A DNA stretch of 64,000 nt, from contig CM119378.1 in assembly GCA_051294905.1 (NCBI GenBank), positions 8,742,001-8,806,000 on the forward strand, written 5' to 3'. The position numbers and the translations under genes are program-made. The DNA is from Botryllus schlosseri (taxonomy: Eukaryota). Within the stretch, counting starts at the first letter, position 1. Each line of letters starts with the position of its first letter. Positions 5,451-47,675 of this stretch are shown here, piece after piece. Below the pieces are notes generated by a model that did no database searches, was not told the origin of the DNA, and saw nothing but the letters and a program-made list of their open reading frames with translations.

Positions 5451-5975
5451 CGAAACAAGAAGAATCAGACTAGAAAAAGCACCTTCACCGGTTCGTCTAC
5501 CGGCGAAGAAGAGGAACCGTTGAGATTCCCAGACCCGGACCGTGTCGCACAACCAGAACAGAATTTATATTATTGAATATTGAATATGTTCATTGTTCAT
5601 TTTATCTCTGCGTCCCGTGTCGCTACCTCTCTCATTCTCTTTAGTATCTCTCCCTCGCATCGGTCTCTGAGCTCTGACTGAATCTATACGTTGATATTAA
5701 AAAAAAGATTAGCACTAAAGAAATATGATCATTGCTACGCAGTAAATTGCTATGATATGACAGTCTTATCATATTATATATATTGATTAAAAATCCGGCC
5801 AGACCCGAGCATGATCGCCTGCGATTGAGGCGTAGCATCAAAGGAGGAAGAGTTTCGCATGAATGCACTTGTAAACATGTCAATCAGATCGGAGCTACTC
5901 GACGGTCGACACTCCGGGATACTCCCATCACAAGGGTTATTTTTTGCGAATTTGTCGGTTTCCGTCGTATATAGC
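5450..5975. promoter_or_regulatory. Putative promoter region upstream of RNASEH2B (possibly bidirectional)
   Basis: CpG-containing non-repeat segment directly upstream of the RNASEH2B ATG, with an acceptor-like ttccgtcgtatatAG at 5973-5974. The promoter role is inferred from position. Confidence 0.4.
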
Positions 5976-5980
5976 CAACA

Positions 5981-6820
5981 ATGTCGCACACTCCGGAAGA
6001 ATGCGAGAAAAGGATAATGATCATACCGAAGGACGCTTTTGACGAAGAAAGAAAGCAACTATCTCTAGAAGTCATAACTTTACAGCACCCATTTTCGGGC
6101 GAAGGTTGTAAGTTTTTGTTGTCCGAAAGCAGAGATAAAATTTACGATATTACCGCCCAAAAAGAGAAATACTCGTCGTGGTTTGTTCAGGATACAGTCA
6201 AAGAAGATGGTTCAATTTTCATATGCACGAAATACGATCCACTTTATCTGGTTTTGCCCTACTTGAAAAATGCTAGTGAAGGCAGCAAGTTCGTGCTCAT
6301 TGATCAAATAATGAAAGACGATAATTATCCAGACTGCTCCAAACTGATAAAGTTATGTTCAAAGGAGGATCTATTGAAAATCGCTGACACTACAGGCTCT
6401 GGTGGTTATGTGGCATTCAAGTATAACAAAGATAAAGCACTTTCGTGGCTGGATTTCAAAATAAATAAAATACAAGAATCGTTGAAGAAGTCGGGATTAT
6501 TTATTGCAGCATCTGACGAAGATGACAAAGAAAATGTTAATATTCATTTGGAATATGCTTTCGGGATTCTTTCAAGTTATCTTCCTAAAGACATTGCCAC
6601 TCTCCTACAATCTCATCTGAAAATAGAGAAAATAACGGATAAACGTCGCTGTCAAGATCCGTTGAACCATCCGCAACCAAAGAAAACAAAAACCGAAAGA
6701 GGAGCTACAGATAAATCGAAGAAACAGCCCAAAATGTCAAAAGCACAAAGAGAATTGAGTAAAGTGGATAAGAAAGGGATGAAAAGTATATCCAGCTTCT
6801 TTTCCCCCAAAGCTAAATAG
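5981..6820 (+). CDS. RNASEH2B: Ribonuclease H2 subunit B, single-exon CDS, 279 aa
   Basis: Family motifs LQHPFSG..FLL, SWFVQDTVKEDG…DPLYLVLPYL and YNKDKALSWL, plus a C-terminal PIP box KGMKSISSFF. AATAAA at 6990-6995. Confidence 0.93.
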   Translation: MSHTPEECEKRIMIIPKDAFDEERKQLSLEVITLQHPFSGEGCKFLLSESRDKIYDITAQKEKYSSWFVQDTVKEDGSIFICTKYDPLYLVLPYLKNASEGSKFVLIDQIMKDDNYPDCSKLIKLCSKEDLLKIADTTGSGGYVAFKYNKDKALSWLDFKINKIQESLKKSGLFIAASDEDDKENVNIHLEYAFGILSSYLPKDIATLLQSHLKIEKITDKRRCQDPLNHPQPKKTKTERGATDKSKKQPKMSKAQRELSKVDKKGMKSISSFFSPKAK

Positions 6821-35780: not shown

Positions 35781-35794
35781 CAGTCACGTGACTG
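35781..35794. promoter_or_regulatory. Perfect palindrome CAGTCACGTGACTG containing the CLEAR/E-box consensus GTCACGTGAC
   Basis: Seen directly, about 260 bp upstream of the NHE ATG. GTCACGTGAC is the established MiT/TFE (TFEB) and USF site. Function here is inference. Confidence 0.55.
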
Positions 35795-36052
35795 TTTTTT
35801 TCCCTGAATTGCTGCATTGTTTATTATGAACTGCTGCTTACCGCTGGTCACGGGACAGTAAGTAATTGTTGGTATTACACTGTATTACGTTATTGAGCTG
35901 GCAGTAGATCGACAGTTCTTGACGTTACCGAACAGTCTACGATCCGGATCCCTACGAGTTTTTCGTTGCATACGAGGTAAGTGGACAGAACAGCAGCGTA
36001 AAAATTATTCTGCTGGTGCTGACTGCCGGATTCCGAACATCCCTCCGAATTG

Positions 36053-38155
36053 ATGGCTATTGGTGTTGGAATGAATCGAGAAAGGTGGATACTGTTCACA
36101 CTATGCCTTTTACAGGCAACTCCAGCGAGTAATGCTGCAGAAAACAGCAATGAAAGACATACAAAAGACTCTGAAGTTATGCTTGTATTTATTGCTCTGC
36201 TGGTTCTCACAATAATAACGACTTTCGCATTTCGATTTCGAAGCTTGCGATATTTTCATGAAACAGGACTCGCCATAGTTTATGGCTTGATCATTGGGGC
36301 CATACGGAGATACGGAGGTGTTACAGACTCAAACTCCAGCTTTTCTTGTAACTCGATTTCTGGTAATAACGTGAACAGAACTGATGAAGATGCTTACATT
36401 GTGAATCGTTCAGATCTAGGAGCGTTGTTCAAGTGTGAAAAGCCTAAGAATGTAGCAGACTTGATGTTGTTTGACCCGGAAGTATTTTTCAATTACTTGC
36501 TACCACCGATTATTTTCTATGCTGGCTACAGCTTGAAAAAGCGTCACTTTTTTCGTAATATCGGAACAATTCTGGCTTTCGCGTTTATTGGAACCACTAT
36601 TTCGACGCTTGTCATTTCTGGAATTACTTTCGGCTTCATTAGAATCGCGGAATCGACCGGTTTGGAGACATATCAAATAGAATATATTGATTGCTTGACG
36701 TTTGGGGCATTGGTGTCCGCAACTGATCCTGTGACTGTATTAGCTGTGTTCAAAGAGCTAAAAGTGGATGTGAATTTAGACGCGTTTCTGTTTGGTGAGA
36801 GCGTTTTGAATGATGCAGTAGCACTGGTCCTCGTTGGTACTATCCAGCATTACAACAATAAAATCGTTAATACTGAACTTCTCGTGGATGGACAACGGCA
36901 ATTCAATGCTCAAGCTTTTTTCGCCTCGTTGGGAGAATTCGTTGGTGTGTTTCTTGGTTCGTTTGCTATTGGATGTTGCGTCTCGTTTGTGAATTCACTC
37001 TTCACCAAGTTCACCAAAATCGGTCACTTTCCTGTTATGGAAACCGGGATATTTTTTCTTCTGTCGTGGTCTGCATTTCTTATAGCAGAAGCTGTTGAAT
37101 TTACCGGGATTGTGGCAGTTTTGTTCTGTGGCATCACCCAGGCACATTACACCTACAATAACTTGTCCTCGGAATCAAAGATAAGAACTAGACAGTTGTT
37201 CGAGGTCTTGAACTTCCTGGCTGAAAACTTCATTTTTGGATACATGGGGGTTGCTATGTTCGTATTCGAACACCATATTTGGATGCCACTGTTTATCGTC
37301 GGTGCATTTATTGCTTTGGTGGTGTCGCGAGCGTGTAACATATACCCTCTAACATTCCTACTCAATCTTGGGCGAAAAAGGAAAATCCCTGCAAACATCC
37401 AGCATATGATGATGTTTTCTGGATTACGTGGTGCAATAGCGTTCGCGCTAGCGATCAAGCAAACTACATCGGACCCGCAAAAAGTAATATTTACGACAAC
37501 ATTGCTTATTGTATTTGTGACGGTCTGGATTTTGGGTGGCACCACAACGCAAGTACTGATGTTTTTGGGGATCAAAGTCGGGGTCGACCCCGACGCACCG
37601 GATGACACAGCCGTGACTAATGAATCGGTCAGGCAAGACACTGACCCTGTGTCTCAAACTCCGAACACGTCGCCAGTGCAGAAATATAAAGACAGTGCGT
37701 GGATGTTCAAGCGCTGGTACAAGTTTGACAAATATTACTTGAAACCATTTTTAACTCATGCCGGCCCTCCGCTGACTACAACACTACCGGATTGCTGCAG
37801 GCCGTGCGCTAATTGTTTCACTACGCAAACTGCATATCTCTCTCAGAGAAATGTTCAAGATAGCGATTCCGAATTCATCCTTAATGAAGACTATGCAGCG
37901 AAAAATGAAAGCCATCTAATGCCTGCCTCTCCCATTGATAGCACGTCTAGTCTGAATGCTAAAACTGACACCGTGGGAGAGAATGTTGCGATATTGACCG
38001 GAAGCAAGGTTGGATCAAACAATTCCCCGAACAGCAACAATAATCATCGTGGGGAAACGTCGAATTTTCAAGGAGGGAGTCCAACGACGTCGGCCTCATT
38101 AACTGTAGTTGATGTCGCTGAAGGCGAATATCCTATGGATCAGATACCGTTGTGA
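36053..38155 (+). CDS. Endosomal Na+/H+ exchanger of the SLC9A6/7/9 (NHE6/7/9) group, single-exon CDS, ~700 aa
   Basis: Motifs HETGLAIVYGL, FDPEVFFNYLLPPIIFYAGYSLKKRHFFRNIG, FGALVSATDPVTVLA, FGESVLNDAVA and SGLRGAIAFALA. The C-tail WYKFDKYYLKPFLTHAGPPLTTTLP is characteristic of the NHE6/7/9 clade. The first ATG is at 36053; the ORF track starts one codon earlier at TTG. Confidence 0.95.
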   Translation: MAIGVGMNRERWILFTLCLLQATPASNAAENSNERHTKDSEVMLVFIALLVLTIITTFAFRFRSLRYFHETGLAIVYGLIIGAIRRYGGVTDSNSSFSCNSISGNNVNRTDEDAYIVNRSDLGALFKCEKPKNVADLMLFDPEVFFNYLLPPIIFYAGYSLKKRHFFRNIGTILAFAFIGTTISTLVISGITFGFIRIAESTGLETYQIEYIDCLTFGALVSATDPVTVLAVFKELKVDVNLDAFLFGESVLNDAVALVLVGTIQHYNNKIVNTELLVDGQRQFNAQAFFASLGEFVGVFLGSFAIGCCVSFVNSLFTKFTKIGHFPVMETGIFFLLSWSAFLIAEAVEFTGIVAVLFCGITQAHYTYNNLSSESKIRTRQLFEVLNFLAENFIFGYMGVAMFVFEHHIWMPLFIVGAFIALVVSRACNIYPLTFLLNLGRKRKIPANIQHMMMFSGLRGAIAFALAIKQTTSDPQKVIFTTTLLIVFVTVWILGGTTTQVLMFLGIKVGVDPDAPDDTAVTNESVRQDTDPVSQTPNTSPVQKYKDSAWMFKRWYKFDKYYLKPFLTHAGPPLTTTLPDCCRPCANCFTTQTAYLSQRNVQDSDSEFILNEDYAAKNESHLMPASPIDSTSSLNAKTDTVGENVAILTGSKVGSNNSPNSNNNHRGETSNFQGGSPTTSASLTVVDVAEGEYPMDQIPL

Positions 38156-41100
38156 ATTTCCAAAGTTACAATAACTGACTCGTTATGATGCGACAATCTG
38201 CGGTGGTTCAATAGTATACACCTGAGGAGTTTACCTGTAATTTTTCTATTTATGTGAATTGCAACTTTGTAAGGCAGCTTGGTCCTACATTACGAAAGCA
38301 CGTACTAAAGTAGTAGTATGTAGTAGTAGTTGTATGTAGCAGTACTTGCATGCAGCAGTTGCACGTGTTAAACAATTTGTCACAACTACACTTAGATCTT
38401 GCAAATCGTTCGCAATATGATTTCAGACTAATCTTAACTTAGCATTTCCGTTAATGTTTAATCAGTTATTGTATTTATATAGCATATATTGTAATATTGT
38501 ATAGGAGAGCATATGCACCATAAATCGCAAGGTGTAGCAATATCTGATCAAATATCTCAAACGCACACACACAGTAGCGTATGGAGCAAATTATAGTGCG
38601 TTGTTTACATTGGTAGGCTGTCATTATCTGTGCTCCATATTTTCAATATATGGATGACCGTTTTGTTTCCATGCTGTTCCAGTTCCTTTGTATTTGATTC
38701 CATACCACACATTCAACATCCATGCTAGAGATTTGTATTGTATTTGTACTGTAAACCACTAACCCTAAGTTTCCTTGACCCTTTCTCATGTAGCAAGTGG
38801 TGAATATACGTTTCTAATTAGATTTGTTGATAGCCTATTGTATATTACTTTCTGATATAGTATACTTGAATTTTCTTTCTAATGGATTTATACCTGATGT
38901 ATATGAGCATATCAATTATTCGCTAATATGCTTTATCACCATTGAAATAGCCACATATTGCTATAATATGTATCGACTACACGACAAATGCAAAAAAACG
39001 TTAAATCCGTCTAGAACCTCTTGATGGATGTGGTACTTGAATTAATCAGCTGCTGCCCACTGAATGGTTTGCAGTGGTTTATTGGAACGATCTCCCGTCA
39101 ATGCTTTATTTTTTGTATTGGCAGTTGCATATTGAATAGGCCTAACCGAAACAACACTAGTGCGTGTTATATGTCTGCTTCTGTTAACTTGTCTGCAGTT
39201 GGGCTAAATTCGACCGGTTAGGTTATAATGTATCTGACTATCTCGGTGATTCACCAGGTATCAAGCATCTCGAAAATTTTTGGTTGAGAATGTATAGGTT
39301 TTGACCGAAATCACAACTAATTCGGTAGCAGTAGAAGAGTTTCATCTTGGGGTAATTTCCCCTCTGTTGTCTATATGTGAGAAAGTCTACTATTGGAAGT
39401 TTAATCAAAAATGATAGAATGTAAAAATGCCACTATGTCCATTCATTTTATCGTATTTTATCTTCTCTGGTGTAGATTTGTATCATTTATGTAACCTGTA
39501 ATTCCATTCTCCACAATAACAGCTAGTATTGGTGTCGATATTAGTGGTTTATCTCGGCATATAGCACTATACCAAAAGTCACTATTGTGTCTATAAGAGT
39601 TTAGCATTTACTTGCATTATTTCTTTAAATGAACTCATAGTCAATTATTGTGCTCGAGTATGATTTACATTGAGCAAATTTTTCATGATAGTGCGCTATG
39701 ATCATTCACACAAGTTTTATTTCTACTTATTCCTGTTTCTACCTTTCGAATATCGGTGTTGCATTTGTGTATTTCATGTTTTGTTTGTAAGCGCGTGTCG
39801 CATGTAACATATTGCAACAAACAATCATCGTTGCCTTCTGATTTAGTCCTTATTATATGATGAATATATTCTTTCCAGCAGACTTAGGTATAGCAATAGA
39901 CTATTATGCACACCGGATACTACAGATGAGAATTCTTGACATCATGAACGATGTGAATGTTACAACGTATCACTTTATGTAAAAATGAAGTATGTTGCTG
40001 CACAGGTATCAATTAGGCCTATATTATGCATGGATGCTAGTTCAAGTGGTGCAATTCATGTAATATTGATTAAATGCCACTGAATTTTTTGCTCGCATAA
40101 GGTCATCAAACATGGTGCACTATCAATTAAATTTCCGATAATTGTCTTGATGAAGTATCTACAACCCTAGTTAATAGGAATGGAATGAGCCATGTAAAGT
40201 TAGGTGTTGTGTGTTCATGTTCAATCAAGTAGGCGCAAGAAAGAGGAAATCGATTATTAGTTGTATTATACTATATACACATCAACTGACCTCTGATTTG
40301 TTTTGTTATGTATATATGATGTCAATTGGATAACTCCTTGTGGTAGGAACAGAAATTATAGTAATATGAGGAAATGAGTCAAGTCACATCATTAGTTCAA
40401 TTCTATGAATTTCTTGTTCAAATCTTGATTGTTTTGTTAGGGTTGTGATTGTGATGTATGGGATGGGGACAATTGGAGTAAAAAGGGGTTGGAACCACTG
40501 ATATAGGCAGTTGATCGCGACAAGTTATTTCCGGCTTAATTTGGTTCTTTATTAATCTTTCTGCTAACAACTCTAAGTTGATTGCTAGACCAGGGAAGTT
40601 AATTGCCTTACAGACACTATTTGAGTCATTGCGTAGAACCTCTCATGTCATGCCCTGACTGCATCTAAAGGAGCTTCTTAAGTTACTAAACTAATGACTA
40701 GATTCAAATATTTTCTTGAGTTATCAAATTGGTGACTCGATTCAGATATTCGGCCTACTGATTATTACATCAGTTGAATTGATAGTCGCCCATGTTTCGA
40801 AACTAAAGGCATATCGCCTACGTCAAGTTCACTTTGATGAATTGTGGTTCAGCACTGTTTAGTAAGCTATGCAGCAGGGCTGGCCAGTCTAGTTAGAGAG
40901 TCATGTGCTGCTCTTTAAGGCCCTTGGCATTGAAATTTTGATTTGTTTTTCGACTCTTTTGACATCGTTTATCCACTTGAGTTTGAAACCAAATGTTTCT
41001 CAAACGCTTCGTTCCTGCGTATATGTATGTGATTGCTAAACTGACGGATAGTATACTGTCCCAAAAGTGCTCTACCCAAGCCTTTTGTGGCAGTGCCATG

Positions 41101-42062
41101 CAGGGCATAGTGCGATAATAAACTGAAAATTCAGAGCGGGGTCGTTGCCTCATTGGTTGATAGGTAATCAGAATCACTAATCATAATCAAGACTTATTGC
41201 ACCTAATTGATGGAGTCTACTGTGCGCAATAAAATCGTATTTTTAGTTGGAAAACACTGATTTCATAACAAGATATGCACATTTGCGTAATGGCAGGCTC
41301 TTTGCAGAGTCGATTATTGTAGCCTCGACATCATAATCCTGTTGGAATTATTTTTGCCCCTAAGAATATCCAGCTGTCAGTGGCCTGGGTTTGCAAAGAG
41401 ATGATGCGCTGTTTTGTTGTGGCCATTGGCCATTGGAACTCTTGTGGTAACACAGTAGAAATGTAGTTCTTGAGCCATTAGTAGTTTGGTACCCCTGTCA
41501 TGCAGATTATTGTTATTTGTTAGCGCCAACCGCAAATAGGAAATTTATTATCTCTGTTCATTGAAGTGTAGCCTGCTATTGGATTTTGTGATGAACTGAC
41601 AAATTTATCATTTCAACATCCGATCTTCAAAATGCTTATCTCATTTGTATAGTATACACAGTGGTATGCCTGCAAGATCTGTTATTCATGCTGAGGGTGT
41701 CGGGTGACGCCATTTCCATATCAAATACAGAAAAAATGATATTTCTTGGTTCAATGCCTAACACGATTTTAGTCTGTATCCCGAGAGGCTGAGGCAACTG
41801 ATTTAATTATGGTGCGGTGTTCAATCAAATTTCGAGACTCTTCTCGGTTTCTACTCGTTTCTGTATAATGAAGTCATCTCAATGTGTGGGTTGGAAAATC
41901 TCTACTGGAAGGGCAGACCAATGATGTAGTTCGCTTGATCAATAAACATAAATGGTAATATTAAATGTCTTTACACTGATCGTCCTGAAATGGCCCGGTA
42001 AGAACTAAATTACACACATAGATTCCCCTTAACCTTCTCTGACTGATCTTGTTGCAGACATA

Positions 42063-43565
42063 ATGACGCAGTATACCATAGTAGAAAAGGTGCCCGATCA
42101 CATGTACTACCATTGCGGGTACTGCGAGTCGTCACTGGCTTGTGCCAAAGGACTCTGGGCGCACACAATGAACGCTGTGGACTACCAAGCCTTGATCGAC
42201 AGGGGCTGGAGACGGAGCGGCAAGTATTGCTACAAGCCGATAATGAATAAAACATGCTGTCCGCAATACACGATTCGCTGTGGCATTCTCGATTTTAAGC
42301 CAACAAAATCCAAGAGAAAGGTGATCAAGAAAATGAGGGACTTTTTGATGACGGAAGGCGACGAGGCCTTGAACAAGTGGAAAGCGAAGCATCAAGATGG
42401 TGGTCGGTCTCAGTCTGCGTCAAACGAAGTGCTCCATAAAACTCCTGAAACAGATGCGAGTCCTATGGAAACTATTGACAGTAAGTGTGTAGCGTCTCGC
42501 GCAATGAAAGAAATATCGAAGGGTGCTGGTCCCGACCCAAGCAAGCCGAGGCGCGTGAAAGCAAAAGTTATGCGTCAGGAAAGAAGTAAAAGCAAAAAAA
42601 CTGAGATGGCTTCTGGTGACTCGTCTACCTCAAGCTCATCTTCCTTTAGTTCATCATCATCCGAACTCATGTTACCCCACAATGTTGCCGATGCAGATTT
42701 TAAAAGGAAATTGGAAGTTAGGACGGTGCGTGCTTGCGTAGAGGATAGCGAATTCCAAAAGTATAGACCCGAGTCATTTTCTGTGTACAGAAAATATCAA
42801 ACCGTGATCCACGGAGACGAGCCAGACGAATGCACGGAAAAGCAGTGGATTCGGTTTTTGGTCGACTGCCCGCTCAACCGCGACTCGGACGGCCCGGGAC
42901 CGGGCTATGGGAATTACCACCAACACTACGTTCTCGACGGAAAGATCGTCGCCGTCGGCGTGATTGATATTTTGCCGAATTGCGTCTCGTCGGTGTATCT
43001 TTACTACGACCCGGATTACGGTTTTTTATCGATGGGCGTGTATACCGCGTTGAGCGAGATTGCTTTCTCGCGATCTCTGCACTCGCAGTCTGCGCAGCTG
43101 AAATATTATTATATGGGATTCTACATTCACAACTGTCAAAAAATGAGATATAAGAGAGAATATCCGCCGTCGTATCTTCTCTGCCCGGAAACGTACGATT
43201 GGGTTCCCGTACAATTATGTTTGGACACACTCGACAAGACAAAATATGCCAGATTGAACGTTTTAAATGGGGGCTCTACTACAACCGGCGACCCTGAAAG
43301 AGGAAGCCGTTCTGACGTTGATAACATAGCCGTGCTTTATCAGCGTGGCATAACCACGTACTTCCAGTATGCCAGATATAAGTATCCGCTTGTGAGTTCT
43401 TGTGAAGGGGAAGACAATTCAAATAGAGATAACGTTGAAAGCCAAAGAAAAAGGTGGCAATTACATAGTATGAAGGCTGAATTATCTGATTTGGAGGACT
43501 ATGTAGCTTCGGTCGGTACCAGTTGTGCATCCAGGATGCTGTTGCACAGAGCAACGCGAGACTGA
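42063..43565 (+). CDS. ATE1: Arginyl-tRNA--protein transferase 1, conserved CDS in a single exon, 500 aa
   Basis: N-domain CGYC…YQALIDRGWRRSGKYCYKP…CCPQYTIRC and C-domain HQHYVLDGKIVAVGVIDILPNCVSSVYLYYDPDY…YYYMGFYIHNCQKMRYK. An upstream in-frame exon (41952-41997) is possible; see findings. Confidence 0.95.
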   Translation: MTQYTIVEKVPDHMYYHCGYCESSLACAKGLWAHTMNAVDYQALIDRGWRRSGKYCYKPIMNKTCCPQYTIRCGILDFKPTKSKRKVIKKMRDFLMTEGDEALNKWKAKHQDGGRSQSASNEVLHKTPETDASPMETIDSKCVASRAMKEISKGAGPDPSKPRRVKAKVMRQERSKSKKTEMASGDSSTSSSSSFSSSSSELMLPHNVADADFKRKLEVRTVRACVEDSEFQKYRPESFSVYRKYQTVIHGDEPDECTEKQWIRFLVDCPLNRDSDGPGPGYGNYHQHYVLDGKIVAVGVIDILPNCVSSVYLYYDPDYGFLSMGVYTALSEIAFSRSLHSQSAQLKYYYMGFYIHNCQKMRYKREYPPSYLLCPETYDWVPVQLCLDTLDKTKYARLNVLNGGSTTTGDPERGSRSDVDNIAVLYQRGITTYFQYARYKYPLVSSCEGEDNSNRDNVESQRKRWQLHSMKAELSDLEDYVASVGTSCASRMLLHRATRD

Positions 43566-44556
43566 CCTTCACTCTCGTGTGACCTTGTTTTGTTTTTGTA
43601 ATGAGTCGCATTCTGTCGATAAATATTCGGTTACTGTTTTATAGCATTGTCTTCTTCAAAAGGTATTTTGTTTTCTAAAACAAAATACCTCGACAAGTGT
43701 ACTGTTTATTCGTCCAAGACAAATAGATATCTCATTGCAATGGGTATGAGCATGTTGATGATGTCCTAGACTGTCATCCACAAGTAACTATTGTATCTCT
43801 CATCACCCGTTTAATACTGCATTTTAAAGGGTGGCAAGCTTTGTTATTTTCAACATTAGGAGTATCCAGTAGACAGGCACAATTTCCCATGCTTAACAGG
43901 CACATACACACATATATATTATATATATATAATATCGGATCTGCAGAGGTATATCTACGTATAAATATGCTGTGTTAGTGTTAATGACACTCTCGCACGC
44001 ACATTTTCTCAATTTTATTTATTGACTTAACACTGTAATTTCTTGCGTAAATCTAATACGTTTTGGTTCTGTGTGAAAGTATCAACTCTTTTTTACATGT
44101 CTGTCTCATCCATTCAAGTAATTTATCCAATTTGCAAATAACTTGCTCCCATGCTGTAACTGATTTAGGTTTTGAGTTGTGGAGCATTAGTGTCACGTGC
44201 TTGGTTTACAGTGCAACGGTCATCAATATATTCATAATTGGGTAATCGGACGTGCATGTTATGCGAAACGCAGTGCCAAGAATTTTTTCCAACAACTTCA
44301 TGGTAATTATTCAATGTAACCGAATCTGAATGACTCTAATCAAGTGCTGGTCAAGTGTTGCGAGTTTTGCTGTACATTAGGCGTGTAGAAATATGCAATT
44401 TCTGTGAATCAATTTGATTGTAACCCTTCTCCATGCCTCATTTGTTGCAGTCTTTAAAGTCATCATGCTCATATTATAAAGCGGGATATGGCCTGTCCCT
44501 GATACTGCAGAACCTGAATATCCCACGTTAGTGGACGCATATTTATTTTGTCGAGG

Positions 44557-45435
44557 ATGTGTGACGCAAAGCCTACCAGCCGCTGGCGGAAGGTGCTGTA
44601 TGAAGATCAGAATGTTCCGGACAACTATGTGGACAAATCTTTTTTGACCGAAATGCGTAAAAACATCTACATCAGGTCGTATAAATACTGGGATCTTGTC
44701 CAACAGACTTCTGTGATCGCGCAGCAGCTTTGTATGGTGAGCTTCCTCGTAGTAGCCTGGTGGGCACTGGATGGTGGATTGCTCACTCCAAGTAATTTTC
44801 TCTGTCTTATATTGCCTTTATCGTTTACTGGCTTCGGAGCTCATATACTTTTAAAGAGAGAAGAGCAGTTTTCGAGATTATGCAGCAGCGTAAAGTCCGC
44901 GATTGTTGTGCTTTGCCTCACAGATTTTTCGTCACCTATTTTGAAGACCCTAACCCACACCATCAGCACCGATACAATCTATGCAATGAGTGTTGTGATG
45001 GTTATTGGGCATTTGTTGCTTCATGATTACAGGCTTGGCGGAGCCATAATTTCAAGGGCTTTGTCACTGAATATGTCGATATTTGCATCTGTGTGTCTTG
45101 CCTCCCGACTGGAGTCGTCTGAACATGTATTTTCGTTCGTAATATTCGCACTTCTGCTGTTCGGGTTCTGGCCCATGCTACAAAGAGATCTTAGGAGGCA
45201 TATACCATGGATAATGGGACCGTTGACTTGTTTGCTCTGTCTCGTTTCATTCATTTTGCTTGTATTTGTGCATATATCTGTTGGTATAGTCTTCCTGGGC
45301 CTTGTCGGTTTTGTCAGTTTTGTATGTCCAAAGCATTTAATGTCCCTCGAGCCTCATAAAAATAATATATACGGTCCATGGGATGAGGCGGTTATAACCA
45401 CTGATGAGTCCGAAGGCAAAAATAAAAACGATTGA
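44557..45435 (+). CDS. PIGC: Phosphatidylinositol N-acetylglucosaminyltransferase subunit C (GPI2), single exon
   Basis: WRKVLYEDQNVPDNYVDKSFL, SPILKTLTHTISTDTIYAMS, LSLNMSIFASVCLASRL and KNNIYGPWDEA. First ATG at 44557. Confidence 0.95.
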   Translation: MCDAKPTSRWRKVLYEDQNVPDNYVDKSFLTEMRKNIYIRSYKYWDLVQQTSVIAQQLCMVSFLVVAWWALDGGLLTPSNFLCLILPLSFTGFGAHILLKREEQFSRLCSSVKSAIVVLCLTDFSSPILKTLTHTISTDTIYAMSVVMVIGHLLLHDYRLGGAIISRALSLNMSIFASVCLASRLESSEHVFSFVIFALLLFGFWPMLQRDLRRHIPWIMGPLTCLLCLVSFILLVFVHISVGIVFLGLVGFVSFVCPKHLMSLEPHKNNIYGPWDEAVITTDESEGKNKND

Positions 45436-45702
45436 ATCTGATGTTCTGCTGTGTCAGAGGTTTAGTATGAGATCTACTGGGATGAGTATTCAACTCCTCT
45501 TTTATAAGAGTCATTGTAGCAAAGTGGACACTTCCTAGTTTAAATGCGCTGTGAAATGAAGATGGAATCTGTATTTATGGGTCGTCAAAAGTTTATTCAT
45601 GTATAAATCAGCATCAGAAATGGTAGATGGCTGGATTTATGTAGGCGAAATCGTCAACACCCCTACAATTATTGTACTGTACAACAGTGTACATATTTGG
45701 GG

Positions 45703-46430
45703 CAGTGTTGGGATCGAGTCACTACCTTTGAGTCACGAGTCATTGAACATTTTGACTCGAGTCGAGTCAAGTCAATCGATTTTTAAAGGTGACCCGAGTC
45801 AAGTCATAATTCAAGTCGAAGTACGAGAAATAATTGTGTCATTGCATTTTGATAGCTGTTTGAAAGTGGCCATTTATTTGGAATCGAGATACGAATATAA
45901 GAGTTAAATACACAAGCAAAAAGATGCTGTAAGCCTATAGCTCACGAATGCGTAGTACCAAAATAGAGAATAGGAAACCTCAGAAAGTTGAAACGAATTG
46001 ATATGACACAATGCACTAGTCTCCTACACATCGGTGAGATACAATTTTAAGCCTGCGCCGATGGTTGACAAGTATATAAACTTATTAACTTGAAATTCGA
46101 TTCAAATCATACACAAGGTTTGGTTGAGGTGGGTACTGGGTACCAACCACAATGAGCATTCTATATAGAAAAGAGATATATACTTTGCCGTTAGACTACT
46201 TTACTACTAGTTTACGAGCTCCGATCACTTTGTTTACGGTCAATTCATTTGTGATCTAGCAATGGAGGCTCAGTAAAACGCGAAGTCATTGAGTGATTGC
46301 TCACTCCCACAGGTCACACCAGCGTATCGAGAACAATCAAAATCTATGCAAGATCAGCCATTTTTATCGACACCGTTACTGATGACTTGAAATTGACTCG
46401 TAAATTCCGCTCTGAGCCACGAGTCCGCAG
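45703..46430. mobile_element. Second copy of the CAGTGTTGGGAT/GACTCGAGTC element, right end missing, without the nested MITE
   Basis: Collinear similarity to 3715-4800, including gcctgcgcc, caatggaggctcagtaaaacgc and tttttatcgacaccg. Confidence 0.8.
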
Positions 46431-46830: not shown

Positions 46831-47675
46831 TCTATCTCTTCAAGAATCGAGAGACGGCGCTTGTACTAAGTTGTCAGTTATCTTATTGCATTTGTGCCAT
46901 CCATATTGCATCACCTAGGCACAGTGTGCGTGTTCGATTTCAAACACTATACTCATCCAAGTCGTTTCGACACCTTTCTTATCTACAAGAAAGCATGCAA
47001 ATGGAATAAGTAAGCCGTTCAATCGTAGGCCTAATCGCCGTTGCAAAACAAAGGAAGAAAGACTTCCAGATCAATAAATTTGCCCTTCTGGATGTTGATT
47101 TACGAAATCATTTCGGGTGCACGGAACTGAACCCCCACTATATTTTCAATTTCAGTAAACTGGATTCTTCTAAAAGTAGAGGTAAACTCAGAATTTACCT
47201 GAAATACTGCTTGAATGGCATAAGATGTACGGTACCATTTACCCCAAACAAAGATTTTGCAAATCTAATACGAAAATCACACTGTTTTAGGCATCAGCCA
47301 TTCTCGTTTGCAAATGAATTTTTCATTTGGGACATTTGTGCCTTGGTGGCGTCAATGATACGCCCAGAGTTGTCGCTTCGGCGCCTTCGGTCCGGGTTCG
47401 GGCGGATAATGGTGAATGGATTTGGAAGTTGCGGTATAGGCCAAATGGATGTTATGCTAGTTTTCTTGTCGTTTTGTTAATATGTTGATTCAATATCAGG
47501 CAATTCGGTTAGGTATATCAACATTATTTTGAGTTTGGTTGCATACAACAGCGCAATCTGTCAAGACCTTCTCAGATTGGGCGCTGGATTTTACCAGTGC
47601 GACGGGCAGGGGAGATCGCAAAATTCCGTAACGAAGGAGGAATTTCCGAAGTTACCTTCATTGTAAACGCCGGCG

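What the first reader, a model, noticed from the sequence alone, without database searches (positions are those of the whole stretch)
36053..45435. Candidate spliced-leader operon of three single-exon genes: NHE - ATE1 - PIGC
Seen: three same-strand genes with uninterrupted conserved CDSs. An AATAAA at 41941 lies ~110 nt before a strong acceptor (cttgttgcAG, 42057) that is 5 nt before the ATE1 ATG. I found no AATAAA or ATTAAA and no CpG-rich promoter in the 991 bp between ATE1 and PIGC, but there are acceptor-like sites (tttgttgcAG ~44450, cacgttAG ~44531). Acceptors also sit 6-18 nt upstream of the RNASEH2B, cortactin and EXTL3 ATGs. Established: tunicates and nematodes resolve polycistronic pre-mRNAs by SL trans-splicing, and Ciona operons are rich in single-exon genes. 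Inference: one promoter near 35.8 kb drives endosomal pH, N-degron arginylation and GPI-anchor genes together. Caveat: the NHE-ATE1 gap is 3.9 kb with earlier poly(A) signals (~40070, 41117, 41228), so ATE1-PIGC is the stronger pair. ASAP appears to have its own GC-rich 5' region near 47350.
Basis: partly seen in the sequence, partly recalled or inferred. Interest (0 to 1): 0.7.

Follow-up and report, generated by a model that had tools for sequence, protein, structure and literature searches.

The report
Sea-squirt ATE1-PIGC pair, likely ordinary operon
Three real intronless genes sit head to tail in a sea-squirt genome; the last two (ATE1 and PIGC) look like an ordinary tunicate spliced-leader operon, while the first (an endosomal Na+/H+ exchanger) is probably a separate gene.

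Summary
The sequence observations hold. Three complete single-ORF genes lie on the + strand: an NHE6/9-type exchanger (36053-38155), ATE1 (42063-43565) and PIGC (44557-45435).

The genome is a stolidobranch ascidian. It carries at least 334 copies of the published ascidian spliced leader followed by GT, so SL trans-splicing is expected.

**ATE1 acceptor.** One transcript contig begins at the AG 42056-57. No run covers 41600-41999. Styela clava ATE1 has the same acceptor-before-ATG layout.

**ATE1-PIGC.** 3'-biased single-cell reads show a + strand 3' end near 44.45-44.55 kb. That is next to the PIGC acceptor candidates and follows a 0.9-kb tail with no AATAAA or ATTAAA. This is the Ciona operon pattern, but no SL read on PIGC and no bridging RNA was seen. 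I put this pair at about 0.5.

**NHE-ATE1.** The only 3' signal in the laid part of that gap (from 40000) lies 0.6-0.9 kb before the ATE1 acceptor. A three-gene operon is unlikely (about 0.07).

The gene order is not conserved in Styela, Clavelina or another relative. Tunicate SL operons are well known, and other agents in this scan already reported probable operons elsewhere in this genome, so interest is low.

The parts
35783..35792 (.). GTCACGTGAC palindrome (E-box of the CLEAR/TFE type) 270 nt upstream of the NHE ATG; a candidate element of the NHE gene's own promoter
   Evidence: It is the only copy in the 64-kb window. Its role as a promoter element is inferred from general knowledge of lysosomal/endosomal gene promoters and was not tested.
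36053..38155 (+). Intronless NHE6/NHE9-type endosomal Na+/H+ exchanger CDS (700 aa)
   Evidence: Pfam Na_H_Exchanger 1e-66; best solved relatives are NHE6 (3e-189) and NHE9. There is no acceptor-like site within 120 nt of its ATG.
40800..41472 (+). Single-copy transcribed non-coding segment; probably the end of the NHE 3' UTR or a separate non-coding RNA
   Evidence: Single-cell 3' reads on the + strand lie at 40800-41199 and X3 contigs at 41136-41472. AATAAA lies at 41117 and 41228. The segment is single copy and has no ORF with a family.
42044..42057 (+). ATE1 splice acceptor (actgatcttgttgcAG), 5 nt before the ATG; the likely SL trans-splice site
   Evidence: X1 contig record 1 aligns from 42056 with only 3 unaligned letters before it. 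Depth is zero at 41600-41999 in all four runs. Styela clava ATE1 has tttttttccAG 6 nt before its ATG.
42063..43565 (+). Intronless ATE1 (arginyl-tRNA--protein transferase) CDS, 500 aa
   Evidence: Pfam ATE_N plus ATE_C; full-length match to tunicate ATE1 proteins; transcript contigs cover 42056-43749.
43566..44510 (+). ATE1 3' UTR of about 0.9 kb with no AATAAA or ATTAAA; its end is estimated at 44450-44520
   Evidence: An X1 contig continues to 43749. Bulk reads give low, patchy depth across the gap, with the 44200-44399 bin empty. The single-cell + strand 3' peak is at 44200-44399 and falls at 44400-44599. No canonical signal is present. The region is single copy. The exact end was not observed.
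44475..44480 (+). TATAAA, the only poly(A)-signal variant close to the estimated ATE1 3' end
   Evidence: Its use is inferred, not shown.
44437..44531 (+). Three candidate PIGC acceptors (AG ending at 44450, 44510 and 44531), 106, 46 and 25 nt before the ATG
   Evidence: Bulk depth is 0.27 at 44400-44599 against about 8 at 44600-44799, which favours 44510 or 44531 over 44450. No SL-bearing read was seen.
44557..45435 (+). Intronless PIGC (GPI-GlcNAc transferase subunit C) CDS, 292 aa
   Evidence: Pfam GPI2 2e-78 over the full model; 65-73% identity to stolidobranch PIGC; contigs and reads cover it.
45421..45426 (+). AATAAA inside the last PIGC codons; PIGC's own poly(A) signal, giving a very short 3' UTR
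   Evidence: The single-cell 3' peak (depth 55.8) is at 45200-45399 and drops to 1.75 in the next bin.

Best explanation
This is an ordinary ascidian gene neighbourhood with two transcription units.

Unit 1 is the endosomal NHE6/9-type exchanger. It has its own promoter near 35.8 kb and is not trans-spliced near its ATG.

Unit 2 is ATE1 followed by PIGC. ATE1 pre-mRNA receives the spliced leader at the AG at 42056-57. The ATE1 message has a roughly 0.9-kb 3' UTR with no AATAAA, and it ends within about 100 nt of the PIGC acceptors (44510 or 44531). PIGC is therefore most likely made from the same primary transcript by SL trans-splicing, as in Ciona-type operons, where the upstream 3' end abuts the downstream acceptor.

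Shown here: the genes are intact; the SL genes exist in this genome; the ATE1 5' junction lies at the acceptor; a + strand 3' end lies near 44.45-44.55 kb; PIGC has its own 3' end near 45.45 kb.

Inferred: SL addition to PIGC; co-transcription of ATE1 and PIGC; separateness of NHE.
For: - **Intact genes.**
- **Taxon and SL.** The nearest proteins are stolidobranch ascidian. GGAGTATTTGGTTGTATTAAG followed by GT occurs 334 times in the genome against 0 for the control. It equals the published 'Chordata 1' SL (PMC3795323).
- **ATE1 5' end.** A contig starts at 42056 with 3 extra letters. The match to AG is what an SL ending in ...AAG would give. Depth is zero at 41600-41999 in four runs. Styela ATE1 has the same layout.
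- **ATE1 3' end.** The single-cell + strand peak is at 44200-44399 (depth 2.8), then 1.1, then 0 at 44600-44799, and it is separate from the PIGC peak. The region is single copy. The gap has no AATAAA or ATTAAA.
- **Match to Ciona.** In Ciona, 16 of 18 operon upstream cistrons lack AATAAA, the cistrons abut, and operons are defined as same-strand pairs less than 100 bp apart. 60% of 5'-most operon genes are single-exon (PMC1488885; PMC2760879).
- **NHE separate.** The only + strand 3' signal in the laid part of the gap (40000-42062) is at 40.8-41.2 kb with contigs to 41472, followed by zero depth up to the ATE1 acceptor. The AATAAA at 41941 shows no use.
Against: - No read or contig carrying SL letters on PIGC was seen, and none was seen on ATE1 beyond 5 nt.
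- No listed record bridges ATE1 and PIGC.
- The ATE1 3' peak rests on only about 9 single-cell reads.
- PIGC is 2- to 14-fold more abundant than ATE1, and the ratio varies by run. That is easier to explain with some independent initiation.
- Ciona outrons are short (mode about 100 bp, mean 438 bp). A PIGC promoter inside the ATE1 3' UTR is therefore plausible, for example near the CACGTG at 44194.
- The ATE1-PIGC adjacency is absent in Styela clava and in Clavelina, where the two genes lie on different chromosomes. It is also absent within 3.4 kb in another relative.
Confidence: 0.5

Rival explanations
1. All three are independent single-gene units. ATE1 and PIGC each have their own promoter a few hundred bases upstream and a short outron that is replaced by the SL. 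The ATE1 3' end lying close to the PIGC acceptor reflects a compact locus, with the PIGC promoter inside the ATE1 3' UTR.
For: About half of Ciona genes are SL trans-spliced as single genes, and their outrons are short. The PIGC to ATE1 abundance ratio varies from about 2 to about 14 between runs. The adjacency is not conserved in three other tunicates. An E-box lies at 44194. No bridging record was found.
Against: The ATE1 tail has no canonical poly(A) signal, and its 3' reads reach the acceptor zone. That is the specific Ciona operon signature. The gap has no CpG-rich or otherwise recognisable promoter.
Confidence: 0.38
2. One promoter near 35.8 kb drives NHE, ATE1 and PIGC as a three-gene SL operon.
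For: All three genes are on one strand and intronless. The AATAAA at 41941 would place an NHE 3' end about 90 nt from the ATE1 acceptor. X3 contigs reach 41472, beyond the signals at 41117 and 41228, which hints at some read-through.
Against: Depth is zero at 40000-40799 and at 41600-41999 in all four runs, including the 3'-biased one. The 3' signal sits near 41.0-41.2 kb, 0.6-0.9 kb before the acceptor. That is far above the <100 bp criterion. In Styela, a sulfotransferase gene, not NHE, lies upstream of ATE1.
Confidence: 0.07
3. The acceptors belong to ordinary cis-spliced 5' UTR introns. Each gene has an upstream non-coding first exon and is not SL trans-spliced.
For: The X1 contig shows a junction at 42057/58 whose upstream partner ends in AG, as many ordinary exons do. 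The SL letters themselves were not read.
Against: The contig stops 5 nt beyond the junction. No joint to any upstream exon within 40000-42055 was reported, and nothing is covered at 41600-41999. The genome has hundreds of SL copies.
Confidence: 0.05

Closest known systems
Ciona intestinalis SL-resolved operons (Satou et al. 2006, PMC1488885; Satou et al. 2008, PMC2760879)
   Same: Both are same-strand neighbours in an ascidian. The upstream gene is single-exon and lacks AATAAA. Its 3' end reaches the acceptor zone of the downstream gene. One SL serves both single genes and operons. The genes are functionally unrelated.
   Different: Exact abutment of the 3' end and the acceptor AG, SL on the downstream gene, and a dicistronic precursor were all shown in Ciona but not here. 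This genome is about three times larger. The upstream gene has an unusually long 3' UTR of about 0.9 kb.
Oikopleura dioica operons (as summarised in PMC1488885)
   Same: Tunicate SL operons whose upstream cistrons lack AATAAA.
   Different: Oikopleura has 23-30 nt intercistronic spacers, a different 40-nt SL and much denser operons.
Monocistronic SL trans-spliced ascidian genes with short outrons (Yokomori et al. 2016, PMC4691747)
   Same: An acceptor a few nucleotides before the ATG, with no stable RNA upstream. This fits ATE1 and possibly PIGC.
   Different: Such genes have their own TSS 50-2000 bp upstream. Whether one exists here could not be tested.

Membership tests
Ciona-type SL-resolved operon (ATE1-PIGC pair) | The organism performs SL trans-splicing (SL RNA genes are present) | tested here: met
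   334 genomic copies of the published ascidian SL followed by GT, against 0 for the control.
Ciona-type SL-resolved operon (ATE1-PIGC pair) | Adjacent genes on the same strand | tested here: met
   No other gene lies in the 991-bp gap.
Ciona-type SL-resolved operon (ATE1-PIGC pair) | Less than 100 bp (typically 0) between the upstream poly(A) site and the downstream trans-splice acceptor | tested here: inconclusive
   About 9 single-cell reads place the 3' end near 44450-44550. The acceptors end at 44450, 44510 and 44531. Neither end was mapped to the base.
Ciona-type SL-resolved operon (ATE1-PIGC pair) | The downstream cistron carries the SL | tested here: inconclusive
   No loose end or contig with SL letters was reported at 44450-44532.
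Ciona-type SL-resolved operon (ATE1-PIGC pair) | A polycistronic precursor RNA spans the boundary | tested here: inconclusive
   No listed record bridges the boundary. Depth across 43.6-44.6 kb is low and patchy (the bulk 44200-44399 bin is empty), and contigs break at the TA repeat at 43900-43937.
Ciona-type SL-resolved operon (ATE1-PIGC pair) | No independent promoter or TSS for the downstream gene | not testable with these tools
   This needs CAGE/TSS-seq or a promoter deletion.
Ciona-type SL-resolved operon (ATE1-PIGC pair) | The upstream cistron lacks a canonical AATAAA (typical of the family, not strictly defining) | tested here: met
   No AATAAA or ATTAAA in 43566-44556. Ciona: 16 of 18 cases.
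Ciona-type SL-resolved operon (NHE-ATE1 pair) | Less than 100 bp between the upstream poly(A) site and the downstream acceptor | tested here: not met
   The + strand 3' signal is at 40.8-41.2 kb and contigs reach 41472. Depth is zero at 41600-41999 in four runs. The acceptor is at 42057.
SL trans-spliced gene (ATE1) | The mature 5' end lies at a 3' splice site and is joined to the SL | tested here: inconclusive
   The junction at 42057/58 is seen in one contig with a 5-nt leader remnant compatible with ...AAG. The full SL was not read. The acceptor layout is conserved in Styela.

The most novel reading that the evidence does not exclude
ATE1-PIGC may be a young, lineage-specific operon. In this reading, an intronless gene came to lie just behind another gene's AATAAA-less 3' end and is expressed only because SL trans-splicing can cap it. 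That would be a snapshot of operon birth in a chordate, with NHE read-through perhaps feeding ATE1 as a loose third member.
Probability: 0.12. Interest if true: 0.45.

Novelty: new member of a known kind. Interest (0 to 1): 0.22.

Why it matters
If confirmed, this adds one more two-gene SL operon to a non-Ciona ascidian. It would also show that the Ciona-style junction, with no AATAAA and the upstream 3' end against the downstream acceptor, exists in stolidobranchs. That is useful for annotating this genome, because such pairs are often mis-fused or have their 5' ends mis-called by gene predictors. It does not change what is known: tunicate operons rich in single-exon genes have been described since 2006-2008. 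The three genes have no functional link that needs co-regulation.

Tried and rejected
- **Ciona SL.** ATTCTATTTGAATAAG followed by GT is not enriched in this genome (55 against 37 control matches). The species uses the longer stolidobranch SL.
- **Rfam.** It finds no RNA family in the window, and no SL copy lies in the window.
- **Own-species transcripts.** Exact-protein look-ups for ATE1 and PIGC returned nothing. The RNA-seq individuals differ from the assembly by about 3%.
- **Relatives' transcripts.** L017, L019 and L020 start with Nextera adapter or arbitrary fragments, not true 5' ends, so they say nothing about SL use. L018 carries 701 nt of unspliced upstream DNA and does not overlap the ATE1 contig L017.
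- **Element at 45703-45790.** Its huge depth, with variable letters on one side and constant letters on the other, briefly looked SL-like. It is a high-copy interspersed repeat found in many transcripts.
- **Gene in the gap.** I looked for a hidden coding gene in the 3.9-kb NHE-ATE1 gap and found no ORF of 100 aa or more.
- **Upstream ATE1 exon.** A cis-spliced exon ending at 41472 is unlikely, because no GT donor is there.
- **Read laying.** The NHE 5' end and 38156-39999 were therefore never examined with reads.
Full report
**What is there.** The + strand of 36-45.5 kb carries three uninterrupted ORFs with full-length family matches.
- 36050-38155 is a Na_H_Exchanger (ATG at 36053).
- 42063-43565 has ATE_N plus ATE_C.
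- 44548-45435 is GPI2/PIGC (ATG at 44557).

The exchanger is of the endosomal NHE6/NHE9 class (E 3e-189 to NHE6). ATE1 and PIGC align end to end with tunicate orthologues. The closest named species is the stolidobranch Styela clava, at 52% for ATE1 and 65% for PIGC. The window is a piece of chromosome-scale contig C8 of a 495-Mb ascidian genome. No coding ORF or repeat family fills the 3.9-kb NHE-ATE1 gap or the 991-bp ATE1-PIGC gap, and both are single copy.

They are correct.
- AATAAA lies at 41117, 41228 and 41941, and ATTAAA at 40069.
- Neither hexamer occurs in 43566-44556.
- CpG observed/expected there is 0.6-0.7.

The ATE1 acceptor AG is at 42056-57, 5 nt before the ATG. Such sites are common, at about 5.8 per kb. 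About 5% of random ATGs have one within 10 nt and about 15% within 30 nt. Sequence alone therefore singles out only the ATE1 site.

**Does this animal trans-splice?** The Ciona SL is not enriched in the genome. I fetched that place and searched the genome with what I saw there. GGAGTATTTGGTTGTATTAAG followed by GT occurs 334 times, against 0 for the reversed control. This is exactly the published 25-nt 'Chordata 1' spliced leader, GATTGGAGTATTTGGTTGTATTAAG (PMC3795323, Table 1). SL trans-splicing is therefore expected here. No SL copy lies in the window.

**Read evidence.** I laid window 40000-45999 with one bulk RNA run, one 3'-tag single-cell run and two sets of RNA contigs.

1. *ATE1 5' end.* One contig (X1, record 1) aligns from 42056 to 42375 with only three unaligned letters in front.
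   - An SL ending in ...AAG joined to 42058 would match the genomic AG and then diverge, exactly as seen.
   - All four runs have zero depth at 41600-41999.
   - The mature ATE1 mRNA therefore starts at the predicted acceptor with a very short leader. This fits the SL better than a normal upstream exon.
   - The SL letters themselves were not displayed.
   - Styela clava ATE1 is also a single exon with tttttttccAG 6 nt before its ATG.
2. *ATE1 3' end.* A contig runs to 43749. Bulk depth across the gap is low and patchy, with the 44200-44399 bin empty.
   - In the single-cell run the laid reads are second mates. In a standard 3'-tag library those read in the sense direction, which I take as known.
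   - On that basis the + strand signal is 0.37 at 44000-44199, 2.8 at 44200-44399, 1.1 at 44400-44599 and 0 at 44600-44799.
   - It is well separated from the PIGC 3' peak, which is 55.8 at 45200-45399 and 1.75 in the next bin.
   - By analogy with PIGC, whose AATAAA at 45421 puts cleavage near 45.45 kb, this places a + strand poly(A) site at about 44450-44550.
   - That site follows a 0.9-kb tail with no canonical signal. The only variant nearby is TATAAA at 44475.
3. *PIGC 5' end.* Bulk depth jumps from 0.27 at 44400-44599 to about 8 at 44600-44799. This favours the acceptors at 44510 or 44531 over 44450. The 44450 site would also leave two upstream ATGs in the leader.
4. *What was not seen.* No SL letters on PIGC, no listed record bridging the two genes, and no poly(A) loose end at the ATE1 terminus. 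The ATE1 3' peak is only about nine reads.

**Comparison with known tunicate operons.** The Ciona literature gives these criteria.
- Operons are operationally same-strand pairs less than 100 bp apart.
- The upstream mRNA ends directly at the downstream acceptor.
- 16 of 18 characterised upstream cistrons lack AATAAA.
- Member genes are not tightly co-expressed (PMC1488885).
- 38% of operon genes and 60% of 5'-most operon genes are single-exon (PMC2760879).

ATE1-PIGC matches every criterion I could examine. On the other hand, about half of Ciona genes are trans-spliced as single genes. Their outrons average 438 bp, with a mode near 100 bp (PMC4691747). A PIGC promoter inside the ATE1 3' UTR, for example near the CACGTG at 44194, cannot be excluded. 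PIGC is 2-fold (contig runs) to 6-14-fold (bulk and single-cell runs) more abundant than ATE1, which leans slightly towards some independent initiation. I put the two-gene operon at about 0.5 and independent units at about 0.38.

**NHE.** Its ATG has no acceptor within 120 nt. A perfect GTCACGTGAC palindrome, unique in the window, lies 270 nt upstream.

Downstream, the only + strand 3' signal in the laid part of the gap (40000-42062) is at 40.8-41.2 kb, next to the AATAAAs at 41117 and 41228. Contigs reach 41472, and then nothing is covered until the ATE1 acceptor. The AATAAA at 41941 is unused in these data. The spacing is 0.6-0.9 kb or more, so the NHE-ATE1 pair fails the operon distance criterion. 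I could not lay 38156-39999, so whether the 40.8-41.5 kb RNA is the end of a 3-kb NHE 3' UTR or a separate non-coding RNA is open. I put a three-gene operon at about 0.07.

**Conservation.** The arrangement is lineage-specific.
- In Styela clava, ATE1 is flanked by a sulfotransferase gene and a tyrosine phosphatase gene. No NHE or PIGC lies within 10 kb.
- In Clavelina, ATE1 and PIGC lie on different chromosomes (contig lengths 20.45 and 25.07 Mb).
- In another relative, no ATE1 lies within 3.4 kb upstream of PIGC.

**Verdict.** SL operons rich in single-exon genes are a textbook feature of tunicates. Other agents in this scan have already reported several probable operons elsewhere in this same genome (unchecked by me). 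This would be a new member of a known kind, of low general interest but useful for annotation.

Noticed in passing
window 45703-45790: An interspersed repeat rich in GAGTCA motifs. Contig depth over it is in the thousands to tens of thousands. Reads carry variable letters on one side and a constant continuation (TCGAGTCATTGCACATTTTGAC) on the other. It looks like a high-copy element embedded in many transcripts and is not part of PIGC.
   Followed up: partly
window 35783-35792: A perfect GTCACGTGAC palindrome (CLEAR/TFE-type E-box), unique in the 64-kb window, 270 nt upstream of an endosomal NHE6/9-type gene. It may be a conserved lysosomal/endosomal promoter element in a tunicate.
   Followed up: partly
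window 45421-45435: PIGC's AATAAA lies inside its last codons, 7 nt before the TGA. The 3' UTR is only about 10-25 nt by the single-cell 3' peak. Another first-stage note in this genome mentions similar poly(A) signals embedded at stop codons.
   Followed up: partly
window 40800-41472: A single-copy, non-coding stretch between NHE and ATE1 that is transcribed on the + strand. It is either the far end of a 3-kb NHE 3' UTR or a separate non-coding RNA. No run covers 40000-40799.
   Followed up: partly
window 43403 and the ATE1/PIGC CDS generally: RNA-seq individuals differ from the assembly by about 3% (44 differences in 1297 nt). One difference is an in-frame 6-nt insertion (GAAGGG) after 43403 in ATE1. 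This high polymorphism cuts many read alignments short.
   Followed up: no
window 5981-6820: RNASEH2B is also a single-exon gene (279 aa; Pfam Ydr279_N plus RNase_H2-Ydr279). An acceptor-like site ends at 5974, 6 nt before its ATG.
   Followed up: partly
G000:C8:28363184-28420651 (L010, L014-L016): A variant SL-like sequence (GGAGTATTTGGTTGTTATAAG followed by GT) recurs, mostly every 5808 bp, in a tandem array near the end of the same contig.
   Followed up: partly
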